Assembly: GCF_001194135.2 (NCBI RefSeq)
Contig: NC_068984.1
Coordinates: forward strand, 133,234,616-133,280,948
Direction: 5' to 3'
Source of the DNA: Octopus bimaculoides
Lineage: Eukaryota
DNA length: 46,333 nucleotides
A model generated the notes under the pieces. It saw only the letters and a list, made by a program, of their open reading frames with translations, ran no database searches and was not told the DNA's origin. A program made the position numbers and the translations under genes. Below, in pieces: positions 364-39,440 of the stretch; position 1 is the first letter of the stretch, and each line of letters begins with the position of its first letter.

Positions 364-3300
364 CTGGATATGATGAGAGTGAAGTATGATTAGAACAGGA
401 ATAACAGGATAATGAACACTTTGGTTTCTTTTGGCAATTAGAAAAAAAGACATATACTTTAACATATACATTAAAGCTATACGTGATTGTGACCTTCATG
501 CGTCTTCTCAGAGTATAAATAGTACAACTCATTGAAATTAATGAGAATCAGAACTGCTTCAGCTTAACAATGTTTACTTTGTTCTACAGTTTCGCTTCTT
601 AGATAGATAGCCACCATTACATATCAAAATTAAGCCTATCTATTAGGGAATTTTTGATTGTCAGTAATTTTTTATTTATAAATCAACATTTTTTAGTGTT
701 TCATTCCTCGTCCTTTTTTCATTTTTCAGTACCTTATCTATAAAGTCACAAGGTCCAATAAGACAAAATGAAATAAAAATAAAATCTAGCTCCTAAGAGG
801 TTACTAATAGTATGACATTTGTGAGAAGAGAATATTTTTCAAATAAAACAAGGAGAGATACAGTAATTTTGATGTTAAGGTGGACTGCTTATCACAAGAT
901 CATAAGAATTAACATCTTACATCAACTAATATAATTTTAAAGTGCCTAACAGATGTTTTGGCAGTTAAACAGCCAGTGGTTTTCGAATAATCCTGGGACA
1001 ATGTAGGGTGATAACATTTTTGGACAGACATGTATTACAATAGATCCATATTCAATATAGAAAGGGGTGAAAGAATTGCAGACCAGAAGGTCAACTAGGT
1101 TACAATTGTATCTGAACAAAGAGACAGGGTGTTCAGGGAAGATATGAGAAGTAGCAGGATCAGATAGGAAAAGAGTAAAGTTGCAGGAGGTGGTAAGCAT
1201 GAGAGGTCAGTTGGGATGGAAGGTTTGCGAGAAGGAAATCATCATTATTATCAGCATCATCGTTTAACGTCCGCTTTCCATGCTAGCATGGGTTGGACGA
1301 TTTGACTGAGGACTAGCAAACCAGATGGCTACACCAGGCTCCAGTCTGATTTGGCAGAGTTTCTACAGCTGGATGCCCTTCCTAACGCCAACCACTCCAA
1401 GAGTGTAGTGGGTGCTTTTACGTGCCAGTTAGCAATAGGACAGGCATGGGACTGGAGGAAATAAATTGATGAAAGTTAACCTCAAAGTCAGAATTTCATC
1501 TACAGAGATGGTGGAGAGGATAAGAACTACAACCAGTTCATAGAATCTGATGAAGAGAGTTTGCTGTATTTTGGGATGATATTTAGTATGCCAAACACAA
1601 ATAACTTCTGAGAAAGTTACCTTTTATAGACTGGCACTGGAGATTAGTCTCTCATCTGATTAATACTATATAAGATAGGATTAATAATTAATTCTGTTGA
1701 TTTTTTAAAACTTTTATTCACTAAAACAAGAAATTTAACATACATGAAATCAAAACATTTTTTAACCTAAAGACTTCTTTTGTTACAGCTTAAGAAATGT
1801 TTTTCATCTCTTCTTGTGTGTCTTAATTCCTTCACTTTTATCTTTTAAATACTAATCATTGTAAGTTGAAAACAAAAACAAAAACTTACAACTTTTTCAT
1901 CTTTTGTTGATTTTTTCACATTATGCTTTAATTTACCCTTTGACCTCCAAAGCTCTGCAGAAATTTTAGCAATTTCACTTCCAACAGCCGCATTGTTCAA
2001 AATCAAAGCAATATCAAGGAGAAAAGTCAAGGAAATTGTAATAAAAAGAGAAAAAAATATTTACTTTCATTCAGAAAATCCATGGAAATCACTTAGTTTA
2101 CAAATATTTATATTTTAATTGAAAATACTTAGGAAATTGCAACACAGAATATGACCAATACAGAGTTATACCAACAATTGAAGCTTTATGGGACTGATAA
2201 ATCTGCCAAAAATAGCAGCCAAATCTCTCTTAAATTTCTTTTTAAAAGAGAGAAAAAGATTATGTAATCTTAGACATATTATGTTTGAATAATAGACAGT
2301 TTAGAGAACGGCAAGCTGCCAGAAGCGTTAGCATGCCAAGCATAATGTTTAGCGGCATTTCATCCATCTATAGGTTCTGGGTTCAAATTCTGCCAAGGTC
2401 AACTTTGCCTTTCATCCTTTCAGGGTCAATAAAAGAAGTGCCAGTTGAGCACTGGGGCTCATATAATCTACTTACTCCTTCTCCAAAATTGCTGGCCTTG
2501 TGCCAAAATTTGCAACCAATAATAGATGATTGATCACTGTTAGAATGTTGTCTTTTCAATAAAGGTAGATCTTGATAAACAGCAACTAATAATGAGTGAT
2601 TCCTTACATTGATACAAAATTATAAATCTGTTGATTCCTGACTATCATAATGATTGTGTGGAGGTGCAATGGCCCAGTGGTTAGGGCAGCGGACTCGCGG
2701 TCATAGGATCGCGGTTTCGATTCCCAGACCCGGGCGTTGTGAGTGTTTATTGAACAAAAACACCTAAAGTTCCACGAGGCTCCGGCAGGGGATGGTGGCG
2801 AACCCTGCTGTACTCTTTCACCACAACTTTCTCTCACTCTTACTTCCTGTTTCTGTTGTGCCTGTAATTCAAAGGGTCAGCCTTGTCACACTGTGTCATG
2901 CTGAATATCCCCGAGAACTACGTTAAGGGTACACGTGTCTGTGGAGTGCTCAGCCACTTGCACGTTAATTTCACGAGCAGGCTGTTCCGTTGATCGGATC
3001 AACCGGAACCCTCGACATGTAATAACCATGTGGGAAAGATGCTCAATTTGCAACAGTATTTAGAGTTTGAATGATTGCTTGGAAATACAGCTTTTCTGTG
3101 TCCGGATATACTTCTGGTTGCCAATCCTCAGCTAGAGAAGACTCTCGCCTAACATGCTATGCAGTGGGACTGAACCCAAGACCATATGGTCGAAAAGCAT
3201 GCTTCTTAACCACACAGCCACACTAGCGGCCTATTACATTCAGGAACTATGATTAACTTTGTGACAATTTAAATAAGGATACTTGCATCAAGAGATGCTC

Positions 3301-3553
3301 CTTGGGTAGCTTTGTGAACATGGCGCAAGATGAAAGGAGTCAGATCACGACCGTGAATATTTTGAGCCCTGAAAGAAAAAATATGATAAAAATATAATAC
3401 TTGTATGTGGCAGCCTGTGGTGATATGATTAAATATATGGGGTAGAGTGTTGTGGTACACTGTGCTGTGTTACAGTAAACTATCGCGTCTTATGAAATGA
3501 TGCAGTGCATTGTAGTATATTATAGTATCACCATCATCACCATCATCATCATC

Positions 3554-3584
<31 letters not shown>

Positions 3585-4301
3585 CCATTACCATCACCAC
3601 CACCACCACCACCATCATCATCACTTAGTGGCTTTTTTTCCATGCTGGCATAAGTTGGACAATGTGACAGGACCCAGTGACCCACAAGGCTGTATCAAGC
3701 TCCATTAGCTTTAGCATGGTTTCTACAGTTGGATACCTCCCCTAACATCATCCATTTTACAGTGTCTACTGGATGCTTTTTTTTGTACCACCAGCACTTG
3801 TGAGGTCACCATTATAACATAATGTTGTTGCTTAGCCTCAGACCAGCCTGATTGAGGAGACTTACGATCAAGAGCATCCCAGCCACAATCACCATAATCT
3901 TTTTGAATATATAGGACTACATTATAAAATGAGTCCTTTCTTTTTTAAGATGGTTTTTTTCCTCTTTTTTCATATGACATATAACATCATAGCATGTATA
4001 TCATGGTAATGTGGTTGACAATATCAAAGGATGATATCACCGACATTGTTATTTAATGTCCACTTTCCCATGCTTGCAGACAGAATTTGTGGAGGCAGAT
4101 TTCCTACAACTGGATGCCCAACTTTCAGTTTCTGTCTACCAAATCCACTCACAAGGGTTTGATCGGCCTGAGGCTATAGTAGTAGACACTTGCCCAAGGT
4201 GCTATGCGAGGGGACTGAACCCAGAACCATGTGGTTGGGAAGCAAGCTTTTTACCACACAGCTATACCTGCACCTATATATACACACATATATATATATA
4301 C

Positions 4302-4358
<57 letters not shown>

Positions 4359-4969
4359 TTCACACACACACACACTCACACACATACACACACACACATA
4401 TGTATGTATATATGTATGAGAGGCTTCTTTCAGTTTCCATCTACCAAATCCAGTTGCAAGACTTTGGCTGGTCTGAGGCTACAGTAGTAGACATTTTCCC
4501 AGGGTGCTGCACAGTGGGACTGAACCCAAAACCTCATGGTTTCAAAGCCAGCTTCTTAACCACAGAACCAAACATAATATGATCTGCACCATTGTAATAT
4601 ACTACATAACATCATAATGAAATCACTGGAAACATAAAGATAAGAGAGTCAGAATGTGATCTTGTGAATCAATTCAATGAACTTACGAAGCTTCAGAAAT
4701 TGCTTCTTGAATTGCCATTTCAATTTGATGCCCAGAGGAAGTGGAATGTTCAGGTATTGGTACTGCTATTAGTATACCGTTCTCTAAAGACAACTGTCTG
4801 TGAGCGACTTGAAAGGAAAAAAAAAAAAAAAACAGTTTTTCTATTAAAACATTAGGAGAGCAAAAATAGCACAGATACATCTAGGAAGAGATTTTGTCTT
4901 ATACTATTGGGAACATAAGCTTATACCAAACTGTCACTACTACTACTACAACAACCACCACCACCACTA

Positions 4970-7965: not shown

Positions 7966-8043
7966 NNNNNNNNNNNNNNNNNNNNNNNNNNNNNNNNNNN
8001 NNNNNNNNNNNNNNNNNNNNNNNNNNNNNNNNNNNNNNNNNNN

Positions 8044-8114
<71 letters not shown>

Positions 8115-11100
8115 ACATGTGATGGGCTTCTTTCAATTTCCATCTATCAAATCTACTTACAAGGCTTTGGTTGGTCCAGAGCTATAGTAGAAGACACTTG
8201 CCCAAGATGTCATTCAATGGGACTGAACCCAAGACCACATGGTTAGCAAGCAAGCTTTTTAACCATGTTTTCACGTTGACAGTTATAGTAATCTGTTGTT
8301 ATTTTGCTGTTGCTAACAAAGCTAGTATGGGGCTCACTGCAACTTAAAATACATATATTAACCCCTAAGTATTTAGACCAGCCATATCCGGCACAAATAT
8401 TCTACCTGTTTAATGCTCAAACAGGCCAGATTCAGCCTATCACACCTACCCTACAATATCATTTGAAAAATAAACAACCACATCATTGAAATCTTGAATC
8501 TATGAGATAAGCCTTGATCAATTCAAAACAATGTGAATAAAGAAGCATTCTCTTTGAAACAGTAATCTGAATGCTAAAGAGTTAAAGTGGTAAACCTCTT
8601 ACTTGATTCAGCACCTCTGTGAACTCCTCCGACACCACCAGTAACAAACAGTGGAATTCCAACTTTGTGTGCAATCAGCATCGTCGCAGATACAGTAGTG
8701 CTTCCATTCAGTTTCTGTATCAATAAACACAAAATCCCTTTAAGATACAATAATTTGCAAGTGGTTTGAAATTGGTAATACCAATATGGTTGATATTTAA
8801 CTTGAAAATATACAATACTGGTGTTTGACTTTGTTGTGCATCATCATCATCATCAACATCACCGCTCCCGCCGCCACCACCATCATCACCATCATCATCA
8901 TCATTTAAGTCAAGTGAGATCATAGCTGTGGCCAATGCCAGTGTTGCATAACTGGCCCGTATAAAAGTACTCTTCAATCGTCGGGCAATATGCTGTGCTT
9001 GAGAAGACCTGTTGAGTCAAGTGAAATCATAGTCGTGGCCGATGCTAGTACTGCCTGACTGGCACCCATGCTGGTGGCACATAAAAAACACCATTCAAGC
9101 ATGGTTGATGCCAGTGCCGCCTGATTGGCCCCTGTGTTGGTGGCATGTAAAAAGAGTGCCAGTGGTAATCTCGGAGTGGTTCGCATTAGAAAGGGCATCC
9201 AGCTGTAGAAACCTTGCCAGATCAGACTGGAGCTGGGACCACCTCCAAGCTTGCCAGTCCTCAGTCAAACCATCCAACCCATGCCAGCATGGAAAGTGGA
9301 TGTTAAATAATGATGATGATACATACTACTCCATTTATTGGTATCTGATTGTTGGATATAGTTAACCAAATTCATTTAAAACAGTGCTGTTTTAAATATA
9401 TNNNNNNNNNNNNNNNNNNNNNNNNNNNNNNNNNNNNNNNNNNNNNNNNNNNNNNNNNNNNNNNNNNNNNNNNNNNNNNNNNNNNNNNNNNNNNNNNNNN
9501 NNNNNNNNNNNNNNNNTATATATATAAATTAACAATATATAAAATTAATAAAAACAGCTGTTTGCAATGCTATACTGTAAAGGAAAATTATAGCTGTCAA
9601 CTAAACTTAACTAAGGATGTGAATAACACCTACATTGCTAGAAATAGGAGCTAAAATGCTCCAATGTTGTTACAAAGTACATAACATATACTCTGATAGG
9701 GGCTGCAATCGAACCGAACACCAAACCAAGAATTCCTTAGACTGACTGGCCAGTTTCAGCTATTTCCATAGCCATCTTCAGTAAGGCCAGCTCATTCATA
9801 TATATATATATATATACACAGACACACATAAGATATTTATGAGAAAGAGGGAAACAGATGTATGGTTCTAGGCAAACTGCAAAATAAGCAATTAGAAAAA
9901 AATGCTATCAGTTTTTACCTGTGCAACAATATAAGGCAGATCTCGTCTTGATACTTTCTGACTGACAAATGCTGGGTCAGCAACCTGCTCAAGCTGTTGA
10001 CCAGTAAGTCCTGCAAAATTATCAGTGTAAAATGAAAACAGAAACATATAATCTTCATGTCTATTCTAATATATAATATCACTGGTGCAGGCATAGCTAG
10101 GCAGCTAAGAACTTTGGTCTCAGGTTTGATCCTACTGCATGGCACTTTAGACCAGTGTCTTATACTATAGCCTGCCAATAAATGTCTCAGCCAATCTATT
10201 TCGTTACTGATTAAATGAGATGCTTCTTTATTCATAAATACTGGAGATTTTATATTGATTATAACAACTTTCTCACAACATACTATTAAAGCACTTACCA
10301 ACACAGGTTTTACCATTTAGAATGGCTATTGTTGCAGGAACACATTGATTGTTTCGGACAATTTCTTCAACTTTTTTGGCAGTCCTAAAATTAGATGAAA
10401 TATTTTGCATTATTTTCTTGTAACAATGCCGACATCATTTTCTTTTTACATACACAAGCATGGTTATGTGGTTAAGAAGTCTGCATCCCAATAATGTGGT
10501 TTTGGGTTCAGTTTGGGTTCATATTATTGTACCTGATTTTTATCAACAATTTAAGCCAGAAAATATCAACAAGGCAACTGTTGGGGTTTAATAAACACAG
10601 TGTCGCCTTCCTGCCACTTGTGCCGGGGGCACGTGAAAAAGCATTCGAGCGAGGTCATTGCCAGTGCCGCTAGACTGGCTCCTGTGCAGGTGGCACGTAA
10701 AAAGCACCATTTTGAGCGTGGCCATTGCCAGTACCGCCTGACTGGCCTTTGTGCTGGTAGCACGTAAAAGCACCCACTACACTCTCGGAGTGGTTGGCGT
10801 TAGGAAGGGCATCCAGCTGTAGAAACTCTGCCAGATCAGATTGGAGCCTGGTGCAGCCTTCTGGTTCGCCAGTCCTCAGTTAAATCGTCCAACCCATGCT
10901 AGCATGGAAAGCGGACGTTAAACGATGATGATGATCTATCACTTATGACTGTATAACAAACTACAGTATAGAGAGCTTGTTATTCCATCTCCTCAAATTG
11001 CATTTAAGTTTCTACCATCTTAACTATACTACTTTTTTATTTTATTTTATTTTATTTTATTTATTTATTTTACTTGTTTCAGACATTTGTCTGTGGCCAT

Positions 11101-18089: not shown

Positions 18090-21000
18090 GTGGGTATTTA
18101 TTTCGACATTTTGATTATTAATTTTTCGTTAATTTTATTTTTTCCGATCCATTCGTTGTGTAGATTTGGGGATTTTATATGAAACCGTTTGAACTAACAC
18201 TTATATGACACAAGCAGAAAGAACATCTGGTTTCCTTGACGGCTATAATCACAATCACTATTTTAATAGTATTCTTATAATTTTTTAGTATCAGTGAAAC
18301 TTGTCGTTTTCTCTATGGATAATATAAGCGTACGCATTTGCTTTGTTTTCTTCCGTGTTAATACATGGAGGCGGGTTTCCTTCTATAGATAAACGTACCA
18401 GGGGAGAGCATCAAGATATGCGTGTCTGGTATACGTGCACTTACATTACTTAAAGGAGGTGGGTAAACAGAAGGAAAGATAACTTAAATTAGTATCTCAG
18501 CAAGATAATAATTTGCTCCAGTTTTTCACACACACACACACACACACATTATTCTGGTAACATGAACAACATCAAAAGAGACAGAATTAGTTACAGCATT
18601 CTCATGAGACTTAGGAATGGAGTTGGGGCAAGATAAACGCTCATACATGGTAATCAACTAAGGAAAGATTGTTGACCAAGCAGATAACATGTACCAAAAT
18701 TTGGGATACTGGACTGGACACTTGACAAGATCTGCAGCCTGGACATCAAAACTAGAAAAGTACTGACCACCACTGACAACTTCCACATCGACAGCAACAC
18801 CAATAGGATCCATGTGAGACAAAGTGATGACAGTAGAGGCATAAGGTCAGTCCAAACAGCCTTTGAATGTTGCATTTTATCACTCGGACAACACTTGCTG
18901 ACCAGCAAAGAAAGAAATGAGTACATACTCAGAAGTGAGAGCAACAACATCTTCAGTGTTGGCAAAGAAATACTGTACAGATACTCTAAGAATACAACTG
19001 TTTCATGTGACCAAAAGAAAACTGGACTGGCCTACTTAAACAGGAGCTTGGAGGAGAAGCAAGCATCATACCAGCAAAAAGCAATGCATGGCTACATATC
19101 CCATAAACTAGAGGATAAAAACAGCATTGAAAACAAGGAATATTGATAGCACACTCCAATAAAAACAGCAATTCAGTGCAAACATAACAGACTTGATATT
19201 GTTCTGTGGGACACGGGACAAAAGTCATGCACTGTTATAGAGGTCAGCTGCCCAGCGGATGTGAATGCACCATCAAATGTACAGGAAAAAGAGAATATCT
19301 ATGGTGAATTAATGTGGAACTTACAGCTCTTGTATTCTGACTATAAATTCTCATTTGTACCCATCATTATAGGTGCATTATGTTATGTACCTACAAACTT
19401 ACAGAAAAACCTAGAAACACCAGAAATTTAGTTATGGGAGACAGCCAGAACCAATTGTTTTGGTTCATTCCATCTTTGACATGTTTTTGTGGTAGATGCA
19501 TGCTTAGAACTGGATTATTTGGTCTGGCTGCACACAAATAAAATCAGTCAAAATATTTAGATTTTATTAACATGTTTATTTACAGATTGATGTTGCAATT
19601 GGTTTTTACAAAAAGCCATCATGTTGAATACCAGTAGCTTGTGTGTGAGAATGTATGCTTGACAAGGAAATCTTTTAACCGAAAGTTGGAGTATCTTAGC
19701 AACCGGCTAGCCAAAAAGTCATCTATGAGTCCTCTGGAACCCTCTTTCTTGTATTTTTCCCATACATCTCAATTTATAACTATGATTTGGTTCAAAACTG
19801 CATGGAATTTTCCATTAATCTAAACGCCATAAAAATACACCAGAACAACAATTGGCTGAAATACGAACCAAGATCACCTGATAAGGACAGTTGCTGCTCA
19901 ATGTGGAAATTTGATATGCTGTGGCCTGTTTTTCTTTTGTATCTGAACTAATAGGGTCTCAAATGTTGAGTTGTGCAACACTTTCTAGTTCCACAAATAT
20001 AAAGCACTGGAAAATAGAGAAGTGTGGTCTGTGCAGGTGTAAGAAGGCTGGAACACTGAAGCACTGTGCACTTGGTTTTGAGTATTGATACACATGGCAG
20101 TATAATCAAGTGCTTAGAGTACTGGTAGAACTTTCAAAGGCAGGTTTCCTGTCTCCACCACAGATAAAAAGTTGATAACAATAACAATAGAGAAACAAGG
20201 TAAATATCTTCAATAAGCAAATCAAAAAAATTATCAGATTGGTCTTAGCTAGTTTCTCTTTAACTTATATCAGTGGCTCCCAAACTTTTTCGGGCTACTG
20301 TCCCCTTAACACCTAGGCTACATTTCTAGTGCCCCACCACAAATATAGACCATTTTTTGCATCAAATTCAAAACAACTGTATTTCAGAAATAAAACATAA
20401 CCTAATTAACCTATTGTTTTGTTATTTTTACATCAATCCTTTTGACCATCCCATTATTGCCCCCCACTTTTCTTCAGCGTCCCCCTAGATATTTCCACTA
20501 CTTCCAGAGGAGCAGTACTGCCCACTTTGGGAACCATTGATCTATACCAAGCCTTCTAAGTTGTATGAACTCTTTAATCCATACCAGTGGTTCTCAAACT
20601 TTTTTGGGTTGCTGTCCCCTTAGCACCCAGGCTACGTTCCTAGTGCCCCGCCACTGCTCACCACCACAAACACAGACCACGTTTTGGTGTTAATTACTCC
20701 ATCCATCTGTTTTGTCAGATATTTCACTGCACTTCTGTGTATCTATTATTGGAACAATCAAAGCAGTAATGCTTTTTTTTCTTACCTATTCTTTCCCTGT
20801 TAATTTATTTATAGACAAGTTTTAGTATTTTACTATTTACTATTTTGTCATTACTTCAGATTTTGTCTGAATTTGAAGAAGATCTTATCAAGTTTGGAGA
20901 TAAAGTTGAGCAAGAAATCTATGCAATACATCTGCAATGTGATCGACAACAACCTACATTAATATCTTATGATGCCTGGGGAAAACGTGTTGATGTTATT

Positions 21001-24000
21001 GAAACCTCGTCAGCCTGGAAAAAGATGCATGCCATTTCGGCCACGGAAGGATTCATTTCAATACCTTATGAAAGAAAATATAAGGAATACAGGTCTCTTT
21101 CAGATTCATATTTTCCTTAAATCTTTCTGGAACATTATTTTTTTTTAAGTTGCAAGGTTTTTAACAATGTATACATCTAATTTATATAATCATGTAATTT
21201 ATAATAATTGATTACTGTTTGAAGTAACAAATCAACTGATTAGAAGTTGAGTAGAAAGTTTCTGTAGTTGTTTTATTTATGGATTGGGCAACAAAATGCA
21301 GTCCAGTTGTGGTGTGATTTTTCTAGGTAATCTATTTCAGTATTAATTATATGTAGAAGTAAACATTTTGAGTTCTGTTTGCCACCAAATTATGTAAATG
21401 ACAAATAGAGATGAAGAGTTGCATTAAATGATTTTGAGATTTGGCTCCTCATAGTTTTACTTTCAGATCCTGTTACAATTAACTTTTCCACACAGAGCCA
21501 ATAAAATAAATACCAATAGCATACTGTAGTTCATTATAATCTTTTCTTTGCAATATTAACAGTCATCATAAAGCAGTGAGCTGGGAGAATCATTAGTATT
21601 TCAGGTAAAATGCTTTGTAGCATTTTATCCATCTTGACAGTCAGAATTCAAATTCTACCAAGCTCAGCTTCGCTTTTTGGCCTTTTTGGGGTCGATAAAA
21701 TAAGTATCAGTTAAGCACTGGAGTCAATGTAATCAACTTATCCCCACCCCAAAAGGGCTGGTCTTGTGCCAAAATTTGAAACCAATTTTAACAGCCATCA
21801 TCATCGTCATGGGTTGGACAGTTTGACATTTTTTTTCTCTCTCTGACTATTTCAGTCGCTTATACCAAGTAGTTAAACTGATCCTCTTCTCATCAGCAAG
21901 TGGTTTATACAGCTGTCCTTTAGCCATGACAGATGGAGCTGCTAAAATTACTGAGGTTAGCCATTTTCATTTCTATTTTTTTTAACTTCTTTCATCCAAC
22001 TGGGAAAAGAGATCAATTTTTGTTGGAAAATTTTCTGTGTTGCACGAAAAACTCAAACCATTAATCAATGTATTAAAGAAAATTTACCTTCATTTCACTA
22101 TTGCTATGTTAATATTTTATTTCATTCTTTTTATTTTTCCACTACATTTCAACATTTACCCCTACAAACATGCATTTTGCTCATTCTACATTTTGTCCAT
22201 CACAACTACAATGACATCAACTCCTCTAAGCAGGTTGGCCAGTGACTACCCCCACCTTGACCTACCCAATATACTTGTTTCACCTCCTTTCATCCTTCAT
22301 ACAGTCTCTCCTCCTCAGACTAGTCATTTTGCATAGCCCTCCCCCATCAATTGTTTTAAATTTTCACCAATGTTTTTCCTATAGTCATTGACACCTTGCC
22401 ACCTAAAAGTATACATAAAACTATCTGGTGCTGCTGTTTCATCAAACCATTTCTATGACCTGAACTGACAAATAGCAGCCTCAAAATGTTCTCATTCAAA
22501 AGCCATCTTCAAATTTCCCTTACTGAAACTCCATACTTCTGAAGATGTGATCACTCACCTGTGCCTATAAATGTGGAGCTGAGTCAACCTTTCATCAAAT
22601 ACTTACAACACTAATTTGGTGTATTGAGCACCACTTTTTTTCATTTGTTGACCTATTTATACATATATATACAGGGTGTATAAGATATTTGAGAACAGAT
22701 TTATATTTATTAAAAAAAACAAAACAGATATATAACAGATAATAACTTTATTTATCAAAAAATGCAGGATTATTCATTTTTGCTGGCTGAGTGGACTGGA
22801 GCAACATGAAATGAAGTGTTTTGTTCAAGAGCACAACGCGTCACCCAGTTCAGGAATTGAAACCACAATCTTACAATCATGAGTCCAACACCCTAACCAC
22901 TAAGCCATGTGCCTCTTACTCACTACTATGAACTAAAATATCCCACTGCTTACCTCCTCAATTATGAACCAATATATTCTGCTGATTAATCTCACTACTG
23001 TGAATCCATCATCTACAGTGTAATCTGCTAACGTCAGCCAATTTTGCAAAGAAATATTTACAGGAATGATAAAATCAGTAAAAGTGTTTATATTTTATAT
23101 AAGAGTTCATGTTGTGTGTTTTGAAACCTTTTAGGAACTCAAGTTGGAAGAAGATTGGTTGAAGAAAGGAGTTTTTGGAAAGCTAACCAGTCGCAATCCA
23201 TTGAAGTTCTGGACATCTGGTCAATGGATGACTGAACGTAGAGGTGGTTCAGATGTTGGTAAGCCTGATATTTCATCATCATTATCATCATCGTTTAACT
23301 TCCAATTTTTCATGCTTGCATGGGTCAGACGAAATTTGTTGAAGCAGATTTTCTATGGCCAGATACCCTTCTTTTCACCTGTTACTAAAGACAATATTTC
23401 CACAAAAACTAGAAATATTTTTCCAAGGAAGACTGAAAATGAACAACATTGCTTGTATGATGATTATACCTGTTTATATAATCGTTGCATGATGTCAAGA
23501 AAAGTATTGGCACAAACACATACATACATACATACATACATACACATTACAAATACATACACACACACATTATACATACACATATACATTATACATACAT
23601 ACATACATATTTATATACATACTCACACATACACATATATAAATGTTTATGAGTGTATAATGGGCTGCCACACAGTTTCCATCTACTAAATCCACTCACA
23701 AGGCTTTGGTTGGCCTAGGGCTATAGTAGAAGACAGTTGCCCAAGGTACCATGCAATGGGACTGAACCTGAGACTACATGGTTGGGAAGCAAGCTTCTAA
23801 TCCACACAGCCCTGTCTGCCTCCATGAGTGTGGTTGTGGTCATCATCACATTTATTTATCAACATCTTAAGACATTAGCATAAAACAGTGAAGCAATGAG
23901 CTACCATTAGCAAGAAATCCAGTTAGGGGTCAAATATGTTTCAAAAACTCGGTTTCTTTTTTTGTGTTGAGATGGCTGAATGCACTAAATACTCACAGGT

Positions 24001-27000: not shown

Positions 27001-29775
27001 GTTGAGACTGAAGGAAAAGGAATGCGTATGCAGAGTTTTAATGATATTAATGTTTTGTTTAAAATGTTGCTGACCAACAATGGCAGGAAAGACATAAGCA
27101 AGAAGGAGATTCAAAGGGGACTGACGTTCTGGGAAGGAAGAACTAAGCATAATGGTTTGTCAGGGAGTGAGGGGATTGGACACACCGAGAGTGATGGGAG
27201 GTAGAAAGACAAGTGTGTCAGGAATGCCTGAGTGGTGGAGGTACAAGACCAGCCAGCTCCATAGAGCCATGGAGGCTATTATAATAGCAATAGAAAATAC
27301 AGAGAAGTGACAGTATGTTTGAGGACTACAGGTTGGAACATGACCATTTGTGATTGAATTCCAATTAGTTGAGTGGTTCTGATCTGGATGAAGTCCAGGA
27401 TGTCAGTTTCTGGAAATAAAAGTTAGGTGAAGTGTTTAGCATAGGATTTTGGAGGTGAGATATTGTAGGGATGATGAGGTGATGTGAGTGAATCAAATGG
27501 GCTTTGGTTATGGTGGTACATAGATTGCTAGATCAGAAGAGCATGTAACATTGTAATAATATTACAAGAAACTGTATGACAAACTTCTATCAATGTTACC
27601 TTGATGTCAAGTATCATGGTAATTTAACTCATTAATTAATGATTACACTATTTATTAATTTAATTGGAATTACTGTTCTGACTTTAATGTACAGTGGCAA
27701 CAAACTGTCAATCAATTCTAATTAACAAAGTCATGGATTTCATGTTCCTTTAGTAAAAGAAAGTTGACCTCATCAGCATTTGAGCCCACAACAGAAAGGA
27801 ACAAAACTAAATACAGTTCGGCTAAATACTGTTCAACTAAGACAAGCATTTCTTCCTTGGATTCTCTTATGCTAATTCTTCTATAATACTTTCAGAATTG
27901 TCAACATGGCTTGTCAGTTTGCAACAGAAAGACAGGCTTTCAAACATCTTCTGAAAGACTTTCCTCTCCATGTGAAAACATTAGCCAAGCTTGAGGTAAG
28001 ATCTATATCAATTATGGAGACTAGTAGAATCATTAGAACATTAGCCAAAATGCTTTGTAACTTTTATTTCAAATCTTTACATCATGAGTTCCAATCCTGC
28101 AATGGCTGACTTTGCTTTTCATATTTTGAGGATCAATAAAATATCAGTCAAATATTGATGTAATCTATTAACCCTACCCGCCCCCAAATTTCTGTCCTTA
28201 TGCCTAAATCAGAAATCAAAAGGACAGTGCATTGGCAGAGTTATTAGAGTATCTGGCAAAAGGTTTGAGGTATTTACTAATGACCTTTTATGTTCTGAGT
28301 TCAAACCCCGATGAAGTCAACTTTGCCTTTGCTTCCAGGCAAAGATGAAATCATTTGCTTGGAATAACTAAAGTCACCCAATTACTTGTGTAAAGTAGAA
28401 GTGACTCTTTTTTTGTTTTTATGAAGATAAGAAAAAATATGAAGCAGATATCAATCCGTACTTTACAGTCATCATTATCAGTGAACATCTTTATGGTCAC
28501 CATCACCACCATCCTCATGTAAAAACATATTCTTTTGTACTCTAGGCATTCAGATTACTCTGTTAAACACAATGCTTATTTACTCACATTGTTTTGAATT
28601 AATCATGCATTATCTCAAAGCTTTGAGATTTTGATGATGTGATTGTTAATTGTTTATTTTTAAAATGACATTGTAACATAAATGTGAGAGGCTGGATTTG
28701 GCCAGTCTGAACATAAAACAGGTAGAATATTTAGGCCAGATGTGGCCAGTTTAAATGCTAAAGGGTTAAACGGCTATCAGGACTTCCAAGAAGAAATGGT
28801 TTGGTTTCAATCCATGCTGTCAGACCAAATTCCCTGCCACACAAGTACAATTCAGAAGGTTTTCAAAATAACAAAGCAAAACAAAAAAATTGTAAGTTCT
28901 TTATAAATTCCTTTTGTTCATTGCAGATGGAAACCAGAGGTGCTACAATACTTGTACTTCATCTTGGCCACTTACTTGGGCTCCAAGAGAACAAGAAATC
29001 ATCTCCTCTACAAGATAATCTGTTACGTCTGCTGACACCCATAACCAAGCTGTACACAGGCAAACAGGTAATTTCTCCCTTTTGTTGGTTGCTTCAGTTA
29101 CTTGAATGACTCAGAAACCTGGATAAACGCTGGTTTCATGAGCCTGTAGGTTTGAGGCCAACTTTACTTTTAGCTATGGTCTTGTCATTGTGTCTGTGTT
29201 TGTCACAACTACCCTTTAAACCCCCCCCCCCACACCACTTGACAACTGGTGTTGGTTTGTTTGTGTCCCTGAAACTTAGCAGTTCAGTGAGAGCGACCTA
29301 TAAAATAAGTACCAGACTTTAAAAAAAAAACATAAATACCAGGAGCAATTAGTTTGACAAATATCCTTCAAGATGGGTGCCCCATCATGGCCACAGATCA
29401 ATGACTGANNNNNNNNNNNNNNNNNNNNNNNNNNNNNNNNNNNNNNNNNNNNNNNNNNNNNNNNNNNNNNNNNNNNNNNNNNNNNNNNNNNNNNNNNNNN
29501 NNNNNNNNNNNNNNNNNNNNNNNNNNNNNNNNNNNNNNNNNNNNNNNNNNNNNNNNNNNNNNNATATATATGTATTTATATATATATACATATATATATT
29601 TGTTTTGCAAGATTTTTGATGTGAAATCGTGTGTTGAAACAGATGTTGTTGTACTTGGGGATGGTCATATTGCCAGTTTAGCCAATAAAAACACACGCAC
29701 TGTATATTTGGTGTTAATTTGCTTCAGCTTTATATTACATTATATTACATTAATCTTATTTCGGCCTCCCCAAGT

Positions 29776-29824
<49 letters not shown>

Positions 29825-32800
29825 CATAATTAGGATAAAGTCATTATTTAATGATTTATCAGTGGCCAGCATACTAGAAATACTATAATGGTTAATTTAT
29901 ATTATTAATATAAATTAACCCTTATTATAATTATATATACTCACACACACACACACACACACCATGAATAAGTCAAGTGTATATGAATGACAAGATTGTG
30001 GTGGAATTTTAACATTAAAATACTGTTGATGTTAAGGAAATAATTAATGAATTATTAAAAATTTTTATCAAAGGCTGTTGCAGTTGTTTCTGAAGGACTT
30101 GAATGTTTTGGTGGTCAAGGTTATATAGAAGATACCGGTATTCCAACGATGCTTAGAGACTCACAGGTATTATATTCAAGAAGAACATTCTTTTCAATAT
30201 TTTGCTAATTCCCACCATCTTTTAATAAATATTTCTTTTTGCATTCAAATAATCAATAATCACTTATGAGTTTTTTCTTTTATGCTTTTGTTCATCAGCT
30301 ATTAATGTATGAAACACTTTTCCATATCTTGCTGACAAAGAATATGCAACGCATTTTATGAGATCAATAGACGTAATGTTGTTGGTGTTTATGGTGATGG
30401 CGGTGATGGGGTGGTGTGCATGTCTAAGAAATATGTGAGCTTCAGAAATGGAGCTTTTAATAAATTCCTCCTCCACCATTTCATCATCATCATCATTTAA
30501 CGTCCATGTCCTATGCTGGCATGGAATGATCTGTTTGATAAGATCTGATGGTCCTAAGGACTGCATCATGCTCCAGTGTCCACTTTGGTCTGGTTTCCTT
30601 GGCTGAATGCCCTTCCTAACTCCAACCACTTTACAATGTGTGCTGGGTTCCTTTTTTCATACCACCAGCACTATTCAGACTGCCATGGAGACTGATCTTG
30701 TGATTTATAATCCAGAAGGTTGATATCTTCTATTCTAAACCCCACACTACATTATTCTTTTCCTTTTCTTTTTTCTCTTCAGTGATACTTCAATCCTTTA
30801 GCATTCTGCCTATTGTAATGCTTATTTATTCACATTGTTTTGGATTAATCACATATTATCTTATAGCAATGATGTGATTTTTAGAATCACATTGTAGGGT
30901 AGGTGTGAGAGGTTGGATCTAGCTGGTTCAAACATAATAACAGAGAGAATATTTTGACTGGATATGGCCTGTTTAAATGCTATAGGGTTAAAATTATGAA
31001 ACACAGGGCAGTTTGAGTTTCCTTCTCATCATTACAATCATTCTCATCAGCTTTGACCACTACCACAAGATTCATCATATACTAAAACTATCTACTGCTC
31101 TCACCACCACCATTATCATTTTCACATCCTGATATGCATAGGCATGGCTGTGCGGTTAGGAAGTTTGTTTTGCAATCATGTGTCTCCAGGTTCCATCCCA
31201 CTGCATGGCACTTTGAGCAAATGTTTCTACAGCTGGATGTCCTTCCTAATGCCAACCATTCCATAGAGTGTAGTGGGTGCTTTTTACATGGCCCCATCAC
31301 CATTTCTTTTAACACAGCACCAGCATGAGAGCTTTTTATGTGATACGAGCACCAGTATCAATTCTGCTGTGGTGGATGGGTCTTCTTGAGTACAGCAATT
31401 CTCTAGATATCTTGGTCTTTAGTCGTCTCCTTCATAAGGTTCAGTGTCTTGAGGTCAGCCTTCAATACTTTGTCCCGTGTCTTCCTTGGTCTCCCTCTTC
31501 CACAAATTCCATCCACTTTAAATGATCAGCCCTTCTTTTTTGCAACTGTCTACATTCACACACATCACATGACTTTGTAAAGGAAAATTAACTAAAAAAA
31601 ATCTCTCAACCTAATATAATTATGTGAAAATCTAATGTTGTCTGCATTTATTTGTAGGTGTTGCCAATCTGGGAAGGTACAACAAACATTCTATCACTTG
31701 ATGTTCTTCGAGCTCTTCATTCCTCTAAAGAGATTCTGGAATCATTTGGCAATAATGTTCGAATGCTTGTTTCTTCAGCTTCCCAGCATGAACTTTTAAA
31801 CACAGCCAGCTGCAATGTGGTAAAAGCAATGGATGAAACTATGCAGATGATGATAAGTAACAAAGATGTCCTTGCATCAGCAGCACGTGATCTGGCATTC
31901 AGTTTTGCACGTATTTATATAAGTGAGTTTGACTACTTTTCCACTGATTTTTACTGTTTGTGGATTCTTCTTCACTGCATTTGAAACTGGGTCAGTAAAC
32001 TGTGACAGGAATCAAAAACCTATGGTTGTTGGTTTCTGTTACATCACTGATGCTGTATTATGTCAATGGTGAAGTCTCTTGCTTCTTAACCCTTTCAATA
32101 CCAATCTGGCTGAAACCACATCTGGCTCTGTAGTACAAATGTCTTGTTTTCATCAGTTTTTAATTAAAATCTTCCACCAAACCTTAGTCACAATTTATAT
32201 TCCTAACACTAACTTAATGATCACTAAGTTATTTTTTCTAAATTCTTTGTTATGTTTAAAATTAATTGAAAGAAATGCAAAATATTTCAAAATAGATACA
32301 GTAACGAAAGGGTTAAATGGCTCAGTTCACTTAGTTGGTGACATGTACCATAAGAAGTTACACTGCTTTATGTTATAACTACTCCTCCCTGTTGTTTGCT
32401 ATTATTCCCCCTCTCAGCAGCAGTATGACATGACTATAGGCAGAAATAGGAGTTTAGGTGAGTGGGGATTTGCAAGTGTATATGGGTGACAATTTACAAC
32501 ACAATACAGTAACTACATATTACAATGAAACTATTGTATAATACAGTAGTATGACAACAAAAATTGCTGTAATACAACTGGCAGATATCACAACAAAATA
32601 ACATAGAAAGAATGTCTCATAAATATTGTTGCAACAAAGCAGCAAGCTTGCAGAATCATTAAAGCATTGAACCAAATGCTTCACAGTATTTCGCCCCTCT
32701 TTACATTCTGAGTTCAAATTCTGCCAAGGTTGACTTTGCCTGTCATCCATTTGACATCAATGAAAAAAAGTACTGGTCAAGCAGTGGGGTTGTTGTAATC

Positions 32801-33537: not shown

Positions 33538-34918
33538 AAAGATAGCATAAAACCCTGAAACCAGAAACCTGATAAAATACAAATACAAGCAATTACATAA
33601 TACAGGAATTTAGACACTTCTGGGTAGCTTATGTAATACAGAAATAAAATCCAGGCTCAACTGAAAAAACTGTGGAATTGCTACATCATAGATGACAATG
33701 GTGATGATGATGATAACATTGATGGTGGTGGAGGTGGTGGTTTGGGAGAAGGAAGTAAATGTCTACAATGAGTCATTTATAAGATTAAACGTTAAATCTA
33801 TTAAAGTTTTCATTAAATAACACATTTGAAAAACTGAAAAATCTGATGTTTTCATTTGTGTTGACAAGGAATTCATTTCCACAGCCACAGAGTTTCAAGT
33901 TCAATCTAACTGCATGCATGTTACCTTGAGCAAGTTTCTTCAACTACAGCTTCAGAACTGAACTACACACAGTGAAAAATAATATAAATCCATTTGTAGG
34001 ATTTAAGTCAGGTTGTTATGTGTTGGTAGTGCTACCGGTAAACAATGTAGACTGGTACTACCTGCAGCAGATACCAAAGTTACGTTGTCACAATGTGGGA
34101 CATATCGATTATATACATATATTTTGTTGCATCTTGGGTGGGTCATTACATTGATAATAAACACATGCACTAGTTCTACTTCACCTCTTTTATTGTTACT
34201 TGTCAACTGGTTAATTATTGCAATAGTTCAGCTAGTACAACAGAGGACTGATGTAGTTACTGTAAAAATTGACATTCTTAGGTTGGTGGTTAAAATCCAT
34301 CTTGTGAGAATAACCATTTTAGAAAGAAGACAGACCTAAACGTGTGATCAGTTAACTGGAGAATTAATCAAACAATTAGTTAATTGGTTAAATAGTTAAC
34401 CAAATGAGAAATAAATAATAAAGAAATGAAACAGAAACAGAACCAGTGTGTGAGTTTATTACAAGCATAATGACCCTCTCAAGAGACAACAAAATGTTTC
34501 AATACACAGGTTCACATCAAGAATCTTGCAAATCAAATACAAAAATGAAACATACATACACATATACTTACATCTTTTATCTTTTACTTGTTTCAGTCAT
34601 TAGACTGTGGCCATGCTGGGGCACTGCCTTGAAGAATTTTAGTCAAATGAATCAATTCCATTACTTATTTTCTTAGTTACAGGGAAGTAACTAAGTAACA
34701 TACATCGTAGTTATAACCATCCTGTCCTTTTCCCAGACACAGCACACTTGGGATCATATTATCCAATAGAAACATTTTTTTTCTAAGGCAGTAAAGTGAC
34801 ATGAAGGAAATTTAGTTACTATTTCTAGTGGGTTGACCAAGTAAAGGTTCCTTCATTGGTTCTGAATGTGTAGTATAATGCTGGATGAGTAACTGTGTTG
34901 TCATGAGTAAAATTATAT

Positions 34919-36804: not shown

Positions 36805-37360
36805 NNNNNNNNNNNNNNNNNNNNNNNNNNNNNNNNNNNNNNNNNNNNNNNNNNNNNNNNNNNNNNNNNNNNNNNNNNNNNNNNNNNNNNNNNNNNNNNN
36901 NNNNNNNNNNNNNNNNNNNNNNNNNNNNNNNNNNNNNNNNNNNNNNNNNNNNNNNNNNNNNNNNNNNNNNNNNNNNNNNNNNNNNNNNNNNNNNNNNNNN
37001 NNNNNNNNNNNNNNNNNNNNNNNNNNNNNNNNNNNNNNNNNNNNNNNNNNNNNNNNNNNNNNNNNNNNNNNNNNNNNNNNNNNNNNNNNNNNNNNNNNNN
37101 NNNNNNNNNNNNNNNNNNNNNNNNNNNNNNNNNNNNNNNNNNNNNNNNNNNNNNNNNNNNNNNNNNNNNNNNNNNNNNNNNNNNNNNNNNNNNNNNNNNN
37201 NNNNNNNNNNNNNNNNNNNNNNNNNNNNNNNNNNNNNNNNNNNNNNNNNNNNNNNNNNNNNNNNNNNNNNNNNNNNNNNNNNNNNNNNNNNNNNNNNNNN
37301 NNNNNNNNNNNNNNNNNNNNNNNNNNNNNNNNNNNNNNNNNNNNNNNNNNNNNNNNNNNN
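36805..37360. other. Assembly gap (N-run); others at 7966-8043, 9402-9516, 29409-29563 and 38372-38425
   Basis: Directly visible. Confidence 1.
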
Positions 37361-38095: not shown

Positions 38096-38425
38096 TGTAA
38101 ACCAATGTCAGAGAAGAGGCAGAAGGAAAGAAAAGTGTCAGTGAAGAAACAGATTGGCTTTCAGAAATAGTTGACAGAGTGGTATATGACTTCAAAAACA
38201 TTTAATACCGGTTGTTGTTGCTGTTTCATTTATATATATATATATATATATATGTACATACATATATACACAATTTATATATATATATATATATATATAT
38301 GTACAAACACATATACACAATTTATATATATATATATATATGCGTGTAAATAAATATATATGTATATATCANNNNNNNNNNNNNNNNNNNNNNNNNNNNN
38401 NNNNNNNNNNNNNNNNNNNNNNNNN

Positions 38426-39078: not shown

Positions 39079-39440
39079 GGAGGCGCAATGGCCCAGTGGT
39101 TAGGGCAGCGGACTCACGGTCGTAGGATCGCAGTTTCGATTCCCAGACCGGGCGTTGTGAGTGTTTATTGAGCAAAAACACCTAAAGTTCCATGAGGCTC
39201 CGGCAGGGGATGGTGGCGAACCCTGCTGTACTCTTCTACCACAACTTTCTCTCACTCTTTCTTCCTGTTTCTGTTGTGCCTGTAATTCAAAGGGTCAGCC
39301 TTGTCGCACTCTGTGTCACGCTGAATATCCCGAGAACTACGTTAAGGGTACACGTATCTGTGGAGTGCTCAGCCACTTGCACATTAATTTCACGAGCAGG
39401 CTGTTCCGTTGATCAGATCGACTGGAACCCTCGACGTCGT
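39079..39440 (+). mobile_element. tRNA-derived SINE family B with 11-bp TSD
   Basis: Near-identical to 2660-3016; ACAGTTTATTA at 39065-39075 and 39448-39458. Confidence 0.87.

What the first reader, a model, noticed from the sequence alone, without database searches (positions are those of the whole stretch)
2015..3282. Minor-spliceosome (U12) intron with non-canonical GT...TG boundaries
Seen: the donor reads A|GTATCCTTAT, matching the U12 consensus RTATCCTT. A TTTCCTTGAC branch site (consensus TTCCTTRAY) lies with its A 12 nt from the only junction, CCTTG|ATATTGC, that restores the conserved 'SLDA-N-IALI' reading frame. No AG lies there: the nearest upstream AG (2065-2064) is 49 nt away and out of frame, and the first downstream AG is also out of frame. 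Established: U12 3' splice sites are positioned largely by branch-point distance and tolerate non-AG/AC ends. Inference: this is a rare GT-TG U12 intron that gene predictors would mis-model, and it could be a rate-limiting splice point for pseudouridine catabolism. It has grown to 1268 nt and includes three SINE insertions.
Basis: partly seen in the sequence, partly recalled or inferred. Interest (0 to 1): 0.75.

Follow-up and report, generated by a model that had tools for sequence, protein, structure and literature searches.

The report
Octopus minor-spliceosome intron ending in TG
Intron 9 of the octopus pseudouridine-breakdown gene is a real minor-spliceosome (U12-type) intron that ends in TG instead of AG, a very rare but already catalogued variant that octopuses and a cuttlefish share and that several public gene annotations get wrong.

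Summary
On the minus strand, window 3282-2015 is intron 9 of the Octopus bimaculoides PsuG–pseudouridine kinase fusion gene. It starts A|GTATCCTTAT, carries TTCCTTGAC with its A 12 nt from the end, and ends CCTTG|ATATT.

The TG is not an assembly error. O. sinensis and O. vulgaris have identical intron ends, and the cuttlefish Acanthosepion pharaonis also has GT...TG, with a TTTCTTGAC branch site 13 nt upstream.

Cuttlefish RNA-seq contigs cross exactly this junction. RefSeq proteins of two octopus species read ...SLDA-N-IALI..., which only this junction produces.

The intron sits at the same phase-1 Asn codon in oyster, starfish, pufferfish and cacao, where it is U12-type GT-AG. It is therefore an ancient U12 intron whose AG became TG before octopus and cuttlefish diverged.

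Three non-RefSeq annotations mis-model it, by read-through or by a cryptic downstream AG.

GT-TG minor introns are already catalogued: 29 of about 73,700 conserved animal minor introns, and one in mouse. This is a new, well-supported member of a known rare kind.

The "rate-limiting" idea is untested. Three interspersed repeats are confirmed, but their SINE identity is only partly supported.

The parts
3283..3368 (-). Exon 9 (86 nt) of the PsuG–pseudouridine kinase fusion gene. It encodes (S)[28 protein letters not shown] plus the first base (A) of the Asn codon.
   Evidence: It is preceded by ...CTTTCAG| at 3370-3369. The orthologous cuttlefish exon has the same length of 86 nt.
2015..3282 (-). 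Intron 9, 1268 nt, phase 1, U12-type with GT...TG termini.
   Evidence: It is the unique junction that reproduces RefSeq protein XP_014786025.1 / XP_052823468.1.
3275..3282 (-). U12-type 5' splice site GTATCCTT (full context A|GTATCCTTAT).
   Evidence: the only copy in the window. It matches all 8 positions of the RTATCCTT consensus. The same motif is found at the orthologous site in O. sinensis, O. vulgaris, cuttlefish, oyster and cacao.
3269..3271 (-). In-frame TAA reached if the intron is retained. Read-through gives ...SLDA-SILI-stop.
   Evidence: This is exactly how UniProt model A0A0L8FYD9 (P0002) ends.
2026..2034 (-). U12-type branch-point sequence TTCCTTGAC, with the presumed branch A at 2027.
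   Evidence: 9 of 9 matches to TTCCTTRAY, with the A 12 nt from the intron end. The published optimum is 11-13 nt (PMC3584512).
2015..2016 (-). Non-canonical 3' terminal dinucleotide TG. This G is the first purine after the branch-site AC.
   Evidence: Identical in three Octopus genomes, and the cuttlefish also has TG.
1890..2014 (-). Exon 10 (125 nt). It encodes (N)[41 protein letters not shown], which is the end of the PsuG domain plus the linker.
   Evidence: The first 16 codons are conserved from plants to animals. The cuttlefish exon 10 has the same length of 125 nt.
1955..1956 (-). Cryptic in-frame AG inside exon 10, 72 nt from the branch A. Using it would delete 20 conserved residues.
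   Evidence: The deposited O. vulgaris models CAI9722067/8 read ...SLDA-K-LWRS, which means they use this AG.
3136..3223 (.). Interspersed repeat about 85 bp long, shared with the O. sinensis intron.
   Evidence: seven other copies in the window at 75-84% identity; it lies inside the block that aligns with O. sinensis.
2660..3016 (+). Young 357-bp interspersed repeat, SINE-like, with sequences resembling tRNA A and B boxes visible on the + strand. It is absent from the O. sinensis and O. vulgaris introns.
   Evidence: a 94% identical copy at window 39079-39435; a 95% identical copy elsewhere in the gene (L001 37206-37570) and no counterpart in the O. sinensis intron. No Rfam tRNA hit.
2311..2520 (.). 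Older interspersed repeat about 200 bp long, shared with the O. sinensis intron.
   Evidence: five other copies in the window at 70-84% identity..

Best explanation
Window 3282-2015 (minus strand) is intron 9 of the Octopus bimaculoides gene for the bifunctional pseudouridine-5'-phosphate glycosidase / pseudouridine kinase.

It is most likely removed by the minor (U11/U12-dependent) spliceosome. In that pathway the U11/U12 di-snRNP recognises GTATCCTT and the TTCCTTGAC branch site together. The second catalytic step then uses the G that lies 12 nt downstream of the branch adenosine, even though T rather than A precedes it. This joins GCA A to AT ATT and completes an Asn codon.

The intron is an ancient U12-type GT-AG intron, found at the same codon and phase in plants and animals. 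Its penultimate base changed from A to T before octopuses and cuttlefish diverged, and the change has been kept since.

- Shown here: the sequence signals, their conservation, the uniqueness of the junction, use of the junction in cuttlefish mRNA, and the junction in octopus RefSeq proteins.
- Inferred: that the minor spliceosome does the splicing, that the site is chosen by distance, and that keeping the first G and last G is what makes TG tolerable.
For: 1. Signals. GTATCCTT sits exactly at the exon end, and TTCCTTGAC (9/9 to consensus) has its A 12 nt from the only frame-restoring junction.

2. It is the only such intron in the gene. The other 16 introns have U2-type GTAAGT-like donors and end in AG.

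3. It is not an error. O. sinensis (GCA_006345805.1) and O. vulgaris (GCA_951406725.2) have identical intron ends. The cuttlefish genome (GCA_903632075.3) has GTATCCTTTA...TTTCTTGACTCTATTTTTTTG|ATG, which is again GT-TG, with a distance of 13 nt.

4. Transcripts.
- Four intronless RNA-seq contigs from separate runs (L008-L011), whose protein is indexed in 51 blocks of the collection, align to the cuttlefish genome with exon 9 ending at 33477 and exon 10 starting at 38370, with no overlap.
- A further transcript-derived protein (P0255) matches the genome-encoded exon 9+10 peptide exactly over 68 residues.

5. RefSeq proteins of O. bimaculoides and O. sinensis read SLDA-N-IALI.

6. Orthology. 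The same phase-1 split of the Asn codon carries U12-type GT-AG signals in oyster, starfish, pufferfish and Theobroma cacao.

7. Coding constraint on the first 16 codons of exon 10. The pattern N-I-A-L-I-x-N-N-A-x-V-G-S-x-I-A is conserved, and octopus differs from cuttlefish at 4 synonymous and 3 non-synonymous codons.

8. Literature.
- The optimum branch-to-3'ss distance is 11-13 nt, and non-canonical termini are spliced, often less efficiently (PMC3584512).
- U12 3' splice-site recognition is described as rather unspecific (PMC2374985).
- GT-TG, GT-GG and GT-CG minor introns are tabulated, and all keep the terminal G (PMC1557818; PMC10639083 Supplementary Table S1).
Against: - For octopus, the junction rests on RefSeq models whose evidence I could not inspect, on coding conservation, and on analogy with cuttlefish.
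- Dependence on U11/U12/U6atac was not and cannot be tested here.
- The 40 nt upstream of the branch site are T-rich, so the textbook absence of a polypyrimidine tract is not clear-cut in this AT-rich genome.
- The four fetched cuttlefish transcript contigs are only 97-98% identical to the genome, so they probably come from a close relative. P0255 matches the genome exactly, but only at the protein level.
Confidence: 0.9

Rival explanations
1. The TG is an assembly or sequencing artefact. A missing A would make the true end TAG, and the intron would then be an ordinary GT-AG U12 intron.
For: The site follows a T-rich stretch, where indel errors are common. The window is identical to the deposited assembly, so that assembly is not an independent check.
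Against: O. sinensis and O. vulgaris, assembled independently, have the identical ...CTCCTTG|ATATT. The cuttlefish has ...TTTTTTTG|ATG in a different flanking sequence. Four genomes would need the same error.
Confidence: 0.01
2. In octopus the real acceptor is the in-frame AG 60 nt further downstream (window 1956-1955), as in the deposited O. vulgaris models. The mRNA would then lack [21 protein letters not shown].
For: O. vulgaris proteins CAI9722067/8 read SLDA-K-LWRS. This AG is canonical and in frame.
Against: - The AG lies 72 nt from the U12 branch A, far outside the 11-13 nt optimum.
- The skipped 20 codons are strongly conserved from plants to animals and show synonymous-biased change between octopus and cuttlefish.
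- Cuttlefish transcripts include them.
- RefSeq octopus models include them.
- A pipeline that allows only canonical splice sites would produce exactly this model as an artefact.

Use of this AG as a minor isoform is not excluded.
Confidence: 0.03
3. The intron is spliced at the TG junction, but by the major (U2-dependent) spliceosome. It would be a U2-type GT-TG intron of the kind described in human genes.
For: U2-dependent TG acceptors exist (PMC2374985; ARS2 and GNAS). The region upstream of the branch site is pyrimidine-rich.
Against: - The donor CAA|GTATCC matches the U2-type consensus CAG|GTAAGT (recalled, not checked here) only at -3, -2, +1, +2 and +3, and lacks -1G and +5G (read).
- The title of that study (PMC2374985) describes U2-dependent TG acceptors as alternative 3' splice sites, and the passage read speaks of TG-AG acceptor tandems. 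Here there is no AG from -49 to +36.
- Both U12 signals are perfect and correctly spaced.
- The orthologous intron is U12-type in four phyla.
Confidence: 0.04
4. The intron is not removed at all. The gene would produce only a truncated PsuG ending SLDASILI*, as in UniProt A0A0L8FYD9, and the downstream kinase exons would be a separate or decaying gene.
For: The 2015 annotation model P0002 ends this way.
Against: The downstream part is 93% identical in protein between O. bimaculoides and O. sinensis over 412 residues. The glycosidase-kinase fusion is the architecture seen across animals. Cuttlefish transcripts span both domains in one ORF. Exon 10 continues the conserved PsuG domain in frame.
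Confidence: 0.01

Closest known systems
U12-type (minor spliceosome) GT-AG introns
   Same: It has the same 5' splice site (GTATCCTT), the same branch-site motif (TTCCTTRAY), and a short branch-to-3' end distance of 12 nt. It is orthologous in position and phase to U12-type GT-AG introns in oyster, starfish, pufferfish and cacao.
   Different: The last two bases are TG, not AG.
Catalogued non-canonical U12 subtypes GT-TG, GT-GG and GT-CG
   Same: The pattern is the same: a G-type U12 donor, a changed penultimate base and a retained terminal G. Published examples:
- one GT-TG intron in mouse in Sheth et al. 2006, Table 2 (PMC1557818);
- GT-TG listed among human G-type minor introns (PMC8280824);
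- 29 GT-TG, 159 GT-GG and 46 GT-CG among about 73,700 conserved animal minor introns (PMC10639083, Table S1).
   Different: This case is in cephalopods, in a gene with no mammalian hit in my searches. The same non-canonical end is shared by octopus and cuttlefish. By contrast, Sheth et al. found that more than half of the non-canonical U12 introns compared between human and mouse had switched subtype. I could not check whether this intron is already one of the 29 tabulated, although O. sinensis was in that survey.
U2-dependent TG 3' splice sites (Szafranski et al. 2007, PMC2374985)
   Same: A TG dinucleotide serves as the 3' intron end.
   Different: By that paper's title these are alternative 3' splice sites of U2-type introns, and its discussion refers to TG-AG acceptor tandems. 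Here the donor and branch site are U12-type, no AG is nearby, and the TG appears to be the constitutive site.

Membership tests
U12-type (minor) intron | 5' splice site matching |RTATCCTT | tested here: met
   A|GTATCCTTAT at window 3282-3273. It matches 8 of 8 consensus positions and is the only copy in the window.
U12-type (minor) intron | Branch-point sequence TTCCTTRAY close to the 3' end (optimum 11-13 nt) | tested here: met
   TTCCTTGAC at 2034-2026 with the A 12 nt from the intron end. The optimum is taken from PMC3584512.
U12-type (minor) intron | No distinct polypyrimidine tract | tested here: inconclusive
   The 11 nt between the branch site and the end are all pyrimidines, and the 40 nt upstream are T-rich. 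The genome is AT-rich overall, with about 35% GC, so this feature does not discriminate here.
U12-type (minor) intron | Canonical terminal dinucleotides (GT-AG or AT-AC) | tested here: not met
   The termini are GT-TG. Terminal dinucleotides are not the defining feature of the class (PMC3584512). This places the intron in the non-canonical subtype rather than outside the class.
U12-type (minor) intron | Orthologous introns in other lineages are U12-type (positional conservation) | tested here: met
   The same Asn codon and the same phase 1 are seen throughout. Cuttlefish, oyster and cacao have GTATCCTT. Starfish has GTATCCTG and pufferfish GTATCCTC. All have CTTAAC or CTTGAC branch sites 9-17 nt from the end.
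U12-type (minor) intron | Splicing depends on U11, U12, U4atac and U6atac snRNPs | not testable with these tools
   This needs snRNA knock-down or blocking in cephalopod cells or in a heterologous minigene.
GT-TG subtype of U12 introns | The mRNA junction maps to GT...TG with no alternative placement | tested here: met
   - Cuttlefish: blastn places transcript positions 953/954 at genome positions 33477/38370 with no overlap, and P0255 is an exact peptide match.
- Octopus: there is a unique junction for the RefSeq protein, but no octopus RNA was examined directly.
U2-dependent TG acceptor (TG-AG tandem) | U2-type donor, with an AG acceptor close to the TG | tested here: not met
   The donor lacks -1G, +4A, +5G and +6T (consensus recalled). 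The nearest AGs are 49 nt upstream and 36 nt downstream.

The most novel reading that the evidence does not exclude
The TG end is not merely tolerated but maintained by selection across coleoid cephalopods. By molecular clocks that I recall but did not check, that is roughly 250-300 million years. Two mechanisms could explain it. A weak 3' site on a minor intron might throttle expression of the pseudouridine-catabolic enzyme. Alternatively, coleoid 3' splice-site recognition (ZRSR2 and the second-step factors) might be relaxed, in which case cephalopod genomes should hold an excess of non-AG/AC minor introns.
Probability: 0.12. Interest if true: 0.6.

Novelty: new member of a known kind. Interest (0 to 1): 0.35.

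Why it matters
Annotation. This gives a clean, cross-checked case in which canonical-only gene predictors break a conserved enzyme. Three of five public models truncate it or delete 20 conserved residues, and they can be corrected.

Splicing. It is a natural example of a U12 intron whose AG was replaced by TG and then kept in two deeply diverged cephalopod lineages. The branch distance (12-13 nt) and the terminal G were preserved. That fits the view that minor-spliceosome 3' sites are set by distance from the branch point and by the first-G/last-G pairing, rather than by the penultimate A.

Evolution. It adds an intron shared by plants and animals to the set of very old U12 introns. It is probably missing from human-centred catalogues, because no mammalian homologue appeared in my searches.

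It does not change any concept.

Tried and rejected
- A 70-residue exon 9+10 query found only one unrelated hit. The word index is too sparse for short queries, so no conclusion can be drawn from the absence of octopus transcripts.
- The look-up of the Patella vulgata isoform failed, so no gastropod intron was obtained.
- I found no Logan or ENA transcript for any Octopus species. The clusters of P0002 and P0123 hold only genome-derived models. Direct octopus RNA evidence is therefore missing.
- Window-wide motif counts for GTATCCTT and TTCCTTRAY are at chance level. I rejected them as evidence on their own. Position and orthology carry the argument.
- ARAGORN and Rfam at E<=1 found no tRNA-like structure in the intron repeats. 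The SINE label rests on copy number, size and A/B-box-like motifs seen by eye.
- I considered A-to-I RNA editing creating an AG, which is known for AA 3' ends. I rejected it because editing cannot turn the T of TG into A.
- I considered sliding the junction to obtain canonical ends. I rejected it because the flanking bases differ, so no equivalent placement exists.
- A literature search for minor introns together with cephalopods found nothing. A search with "Octopus" found only the pan-eukaryotic survey.
- Two searches were malformed and returned errors.
- I used an E. coli PsuG sequence written from memory, only as a tblastn probe to locate exons. Nothing rests on it.
Full report
**What is there**

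The window is 100% identical to Octopus bimaculoides assembly GCA_001194135.2, chromosome record CM046604.1.

On the minus strand it holds exons 1-11 of an 18-exon gene. The 689-residue RefSeq product (XP_014786025.1 / XP_052823468.1, P0122) joins a pseudouridine-5'-phosphate glycosidase domain (PF04227) to a PfkB kinase domain (PF00294).

The finding's coordinates are intron 9.
- Exon 9 (window 3368-3283) ends ...TCT CTT GAT GCA A.
- The intron starts GTATCCTTAT at 3282.
- TTCCTTGAC occupies 2034-2026.
- The intron ends ...TTTTCTCCTTG at 2015.
- Exon 10 (2014-1890) starts AT ATT GCT TTG ....

**Check of the observation**

- The branch A at 2027 is 12 nt from the last intron base.
- The nearest upstream AG (2065-2064) would add 49 nt, shift the frame and hit a stop.
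- The first downstream AG (1979-1978) would remove 37 nt and shift the frame.

A search of junctions near the exon ends found only one that reproduces the RefSeq protein. It cannot slide by even one base, because the flanking bases differ.

Motif counts over the whole window are at chance level. The significance lies in where the motifs sit and in their recurrence in other genomes.

Intron 9 is the only intron of the gene with U12-type signals. The other 16 have GTAAGT-like donors and end in AG.

**Is the TG real?**

TTTCCTTGACTTTTCTCCTTG|ATATTGC.

The cuttlefish Acanthosepion pharaonis (GCA_903632075.3, 4892 nt) has TCAA|GTATCCTTTATC ... TTTTCTTGACTCTATTTTTTTG|ATGTTGC. That is again GT...TG, in a different flanking sequence, with the branch A 13 nt from the end.

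An artefact repeated in four genomes is not credible.

**Is the junction used?**

For cuttlefish the answer is yes, from direct evidence.
- The 706-residue product (P0246) is indexed in 51 blocks of the collection.
- The four contigs fetched (L008-L011, from separate SRA runs) are intronless, 2.5-2.7 kb long and 97-98% identical to the genome exons.
- They align with exon 9 ending at genome position 33477 and exon 10 starting at 38370, with adjacent query positions 953/954 and no overlap.
- Another transcript-derived protein in the same cluster (P0255) contains, residue for residue, the 68-residue peptide encoded by the genome's exon 9 joined to exon 10 at the TG junction. This peptide differs from those of the other transcripts tested.

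For octopus the evidence is indirect.
- RefSeq proteins of O. bimaculoides and O. sinensis read ...[22 protein letters not shown]....
- The 16 codons after the junction follow the pattern N-I-A-L-I-x-N-N-A-x-V-G-S-x-I-A, conserved from cacao to Hydra to vertebrates.
- Octopus and cuttlefish differ there at 4 synonymous and 3 non-synonymous codons.

These codons are therefore translated in this frame, and only the TG junction allows that. No octopus transcript was retrievable here.

**What the intron is**

The same codon (Asn, split A|AT or A|AC, phase 1) carries an intron in every genome examined.

| Species | Donor | Branch site | A to 3' end | 3' end |
|---|---|---|---|---|
| Crassostrea virginica | GTATCCTT | TTCTTAAC | 9 nt | CAG |
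| Asterias rubens | GTATCCTG | CCTTAAC | 17 nt | CAG |
| Takifugu rubripes | GTATCCTC | CCTTAAC | 16 nt | AAG |
| Theobroma cacao | GTATCCTT | TTTCTTAAC | 11 nt | GAG |
| Hydra vulgaris | GTATCTTT (degenerate) | TTCTTTAC (degenerate) | 15 nt | CAG |

This is therefore an ancient U12-type GT-AG intron shared by plants and animals. Its penultimate base changed from A to T in an ancestor of octopus and cuttlefish.

Intron length ranges from 94 nt in pufferfish to 5795 nt in Hydra. The O. bimaculoides copy is the shortest of the four cephalopod introns.

**How it most likely works**

The first step is inferred to be ordinary minor-spliceosome recognition of the donor and branch site, both of which match consensus perfectly.

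The published rules fit the second step.
- The optimum branch-to-3' site distance is 11-13 nt.
- Non-canonical termini are spliced, often less efficiently.
- 3' site choice is error-prone and rather unspecific (PMC3584512; PMC2374985).

In octopus the stretch after the branch AC is TTTTCTCCTT and then G, so this G is the first purine and lies at distance 12. In cuttlefish the G lies at distance 13.

The first and last intron bases are still G and G. The tabulated G-type variants GT-GG, GT-CG and GT-TG all keep that terminal G. I infer that distance together with the G...G pairing defines the site. This was not tested.

If the intron is retained, the frame reads SILI and then TAA at 3271-3269, which removes the end of the glycosidase domain and the whole kinase.

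**Rivals**

- An assembly error is excluded by the four genomes.
- Use of the in-frame AG at 1956-1955 is what the deposited O. vulgaris proteins show (SLDA-K-LWRS). That AG lies 72 nt from the branch A and deletes conserved residues that cuttlefish mRNAs keep. It looks like an artefact of canonical-only annotation, although a minor isoform is not excluded.
- U2-dependent splicing of a GT-TG intron is unlikely given the donor CAA|GTATCC, the lack of any nearby AG and the U12-type orthologues.
- A-to-I editing cannot create an AG from TG.

**Annotation consequence**

- UniProt A0A0L8FYD9 (O. bimaculoides) reads through the donor and stops at SLDASILI*.
- The O. vulgaris models skip 20 residues.
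- The A. pharaonis model reads SLES-SILYLCK-LQQSS, which is read-through followed by a skip.

**Repeats in the intron**

Three segments recur elsewhere in the window.
- 3223-3136: seven other copies at 75-84% identity.
- 3016-2660: one copy at 94% identity, at 39079-39435.
- 2520-2311: five other copies at 70-84% identity.

The 357-bp element is absent from the O. sinensis and O. vulgaris introns, so it is a recent insertion. The other two lie in blocks shared with those species.

ARAGORN and Rfam see no tRNA fold in any of them. "Three interspersed repeats" is confirmed. "SINEs" is plausible but not shown.

**Comparison with what is known, and novelty**

Non-canonical U12 termini make up about 4-5% of minor introns. 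GT-TG in particular is listed:
- once in mouse (PMC1557818, Table 2);
- among human G-type minor introns (PMC8280824);
- as 29 of about 73,700 conserved animal minor introns and 15 in plants (PMC10639083, Table S1). That survey included O. sinensis.

The kind is therefore known, and RefSeq already encodes this junction. I found no paper that describes this intron or minor introns in cephalopods specifically.

Two points are mildly notable. The same non-canonical end is shared by octopus and cuttlefish, whereas more than half of non-canonical U12 introns switched subtype between human and mouse. And the intron is shared by plants and animals.

**Verdict**

The finding is real, correctly read and well supported. 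It is a new member of a known rare kind and is of modest interest. The suggested regulatory role is untested.

Noticed in passing
window 20815-21117 (+) and 31658-31981 (+): Two open segments on the opposite strand match Pfam AidB_N (E 3.9e-6) and ACDH-11_C (E 5.2e-11). An AidB/ACAD11-like acyl-CoA dehydrogenase gene appears to lie head-to-head with the PsuG-kinase gene, whose first exon is near window 13236-13164.
   Followed up: partly
window 7966-8043, 9402-9516, 29409-29563, 36805-37360, 38372-38425: These are runs of N, meaning assembly gaps. The 36.8-37.4 kb gap explains the apparent 21.6% GC dip in the composition profile and the long X-filled ORFs. None of the gaps touches intron 9.
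   Followed up: yes
window 34217-34309 (+): This is the only Rfam hit at gathering threshold in the window: tRNA, 35.1 bits over 93 nt. ARAGORN does not call a tRNA there. It may be a tRNA-derived repeat or a pseudogene.
   Followed up: partly
Public protein records P0002 (UniProt A0A0L8FYD9), P0243/P0244 (O. vulgaris CAI9722067/8), P0245 (A. pharaonis CAE1248353): All three non-RefSeq annotations mis-model intron 9. They show read-through to a stop, a 20-residue deletion through a cryptic AG, and read-through followed by a skip. The records could be corrected.
   Followed up: yes
L013 50729-56523 (Hydra vulgaris): The orthologous Hydra intron has weakened U12 signals: donor GTATCTTT, branch site TTCTTTAC, and a T-rich tract before CAG. 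It may be on the way to conversion to U2-type.
   Followed up: no
L014 5562-5788 (Theobroma cacao): The plant orthologue has a textbook U12 GT-AG intron at the same codon and phase: GTATCCTTAA ... TTTCTTAAC, 11 nt from GAG. This intron position therefore predates the plant-animal split.
   Followed up: partly
Hit lists: Among the 240 best hits listed for the glycosidase and kinase parts there are birds, reptiles, amphibians, fishes, invertebrates, plants and fungi, but no mammal. That would explain why this intron is absent from human-centred U12 catalogues.
   Followed up: no
L002 1460-1572 and 1963-2076 of the O. sinensis intron (same in O. vulgaris, L007): A segment of about 114 nt is duplicated inside the O. 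sinensis and O. vulgaris intron, with about 390 nt between the copies. O. bimaculoides has a single copy. This accounts for part of the length difference (2219/2237 nt against 1268 nt).
   Followed up: no
window ~3530-3600 (minus strand, intron 8) and 4056-4582: There is a GAT/GGT-type microsatellite just upstream of exon 9, and TA/TG/CA-rich simple repeats that create spurious ORFs of 130-143 residues.
   Followed up: no
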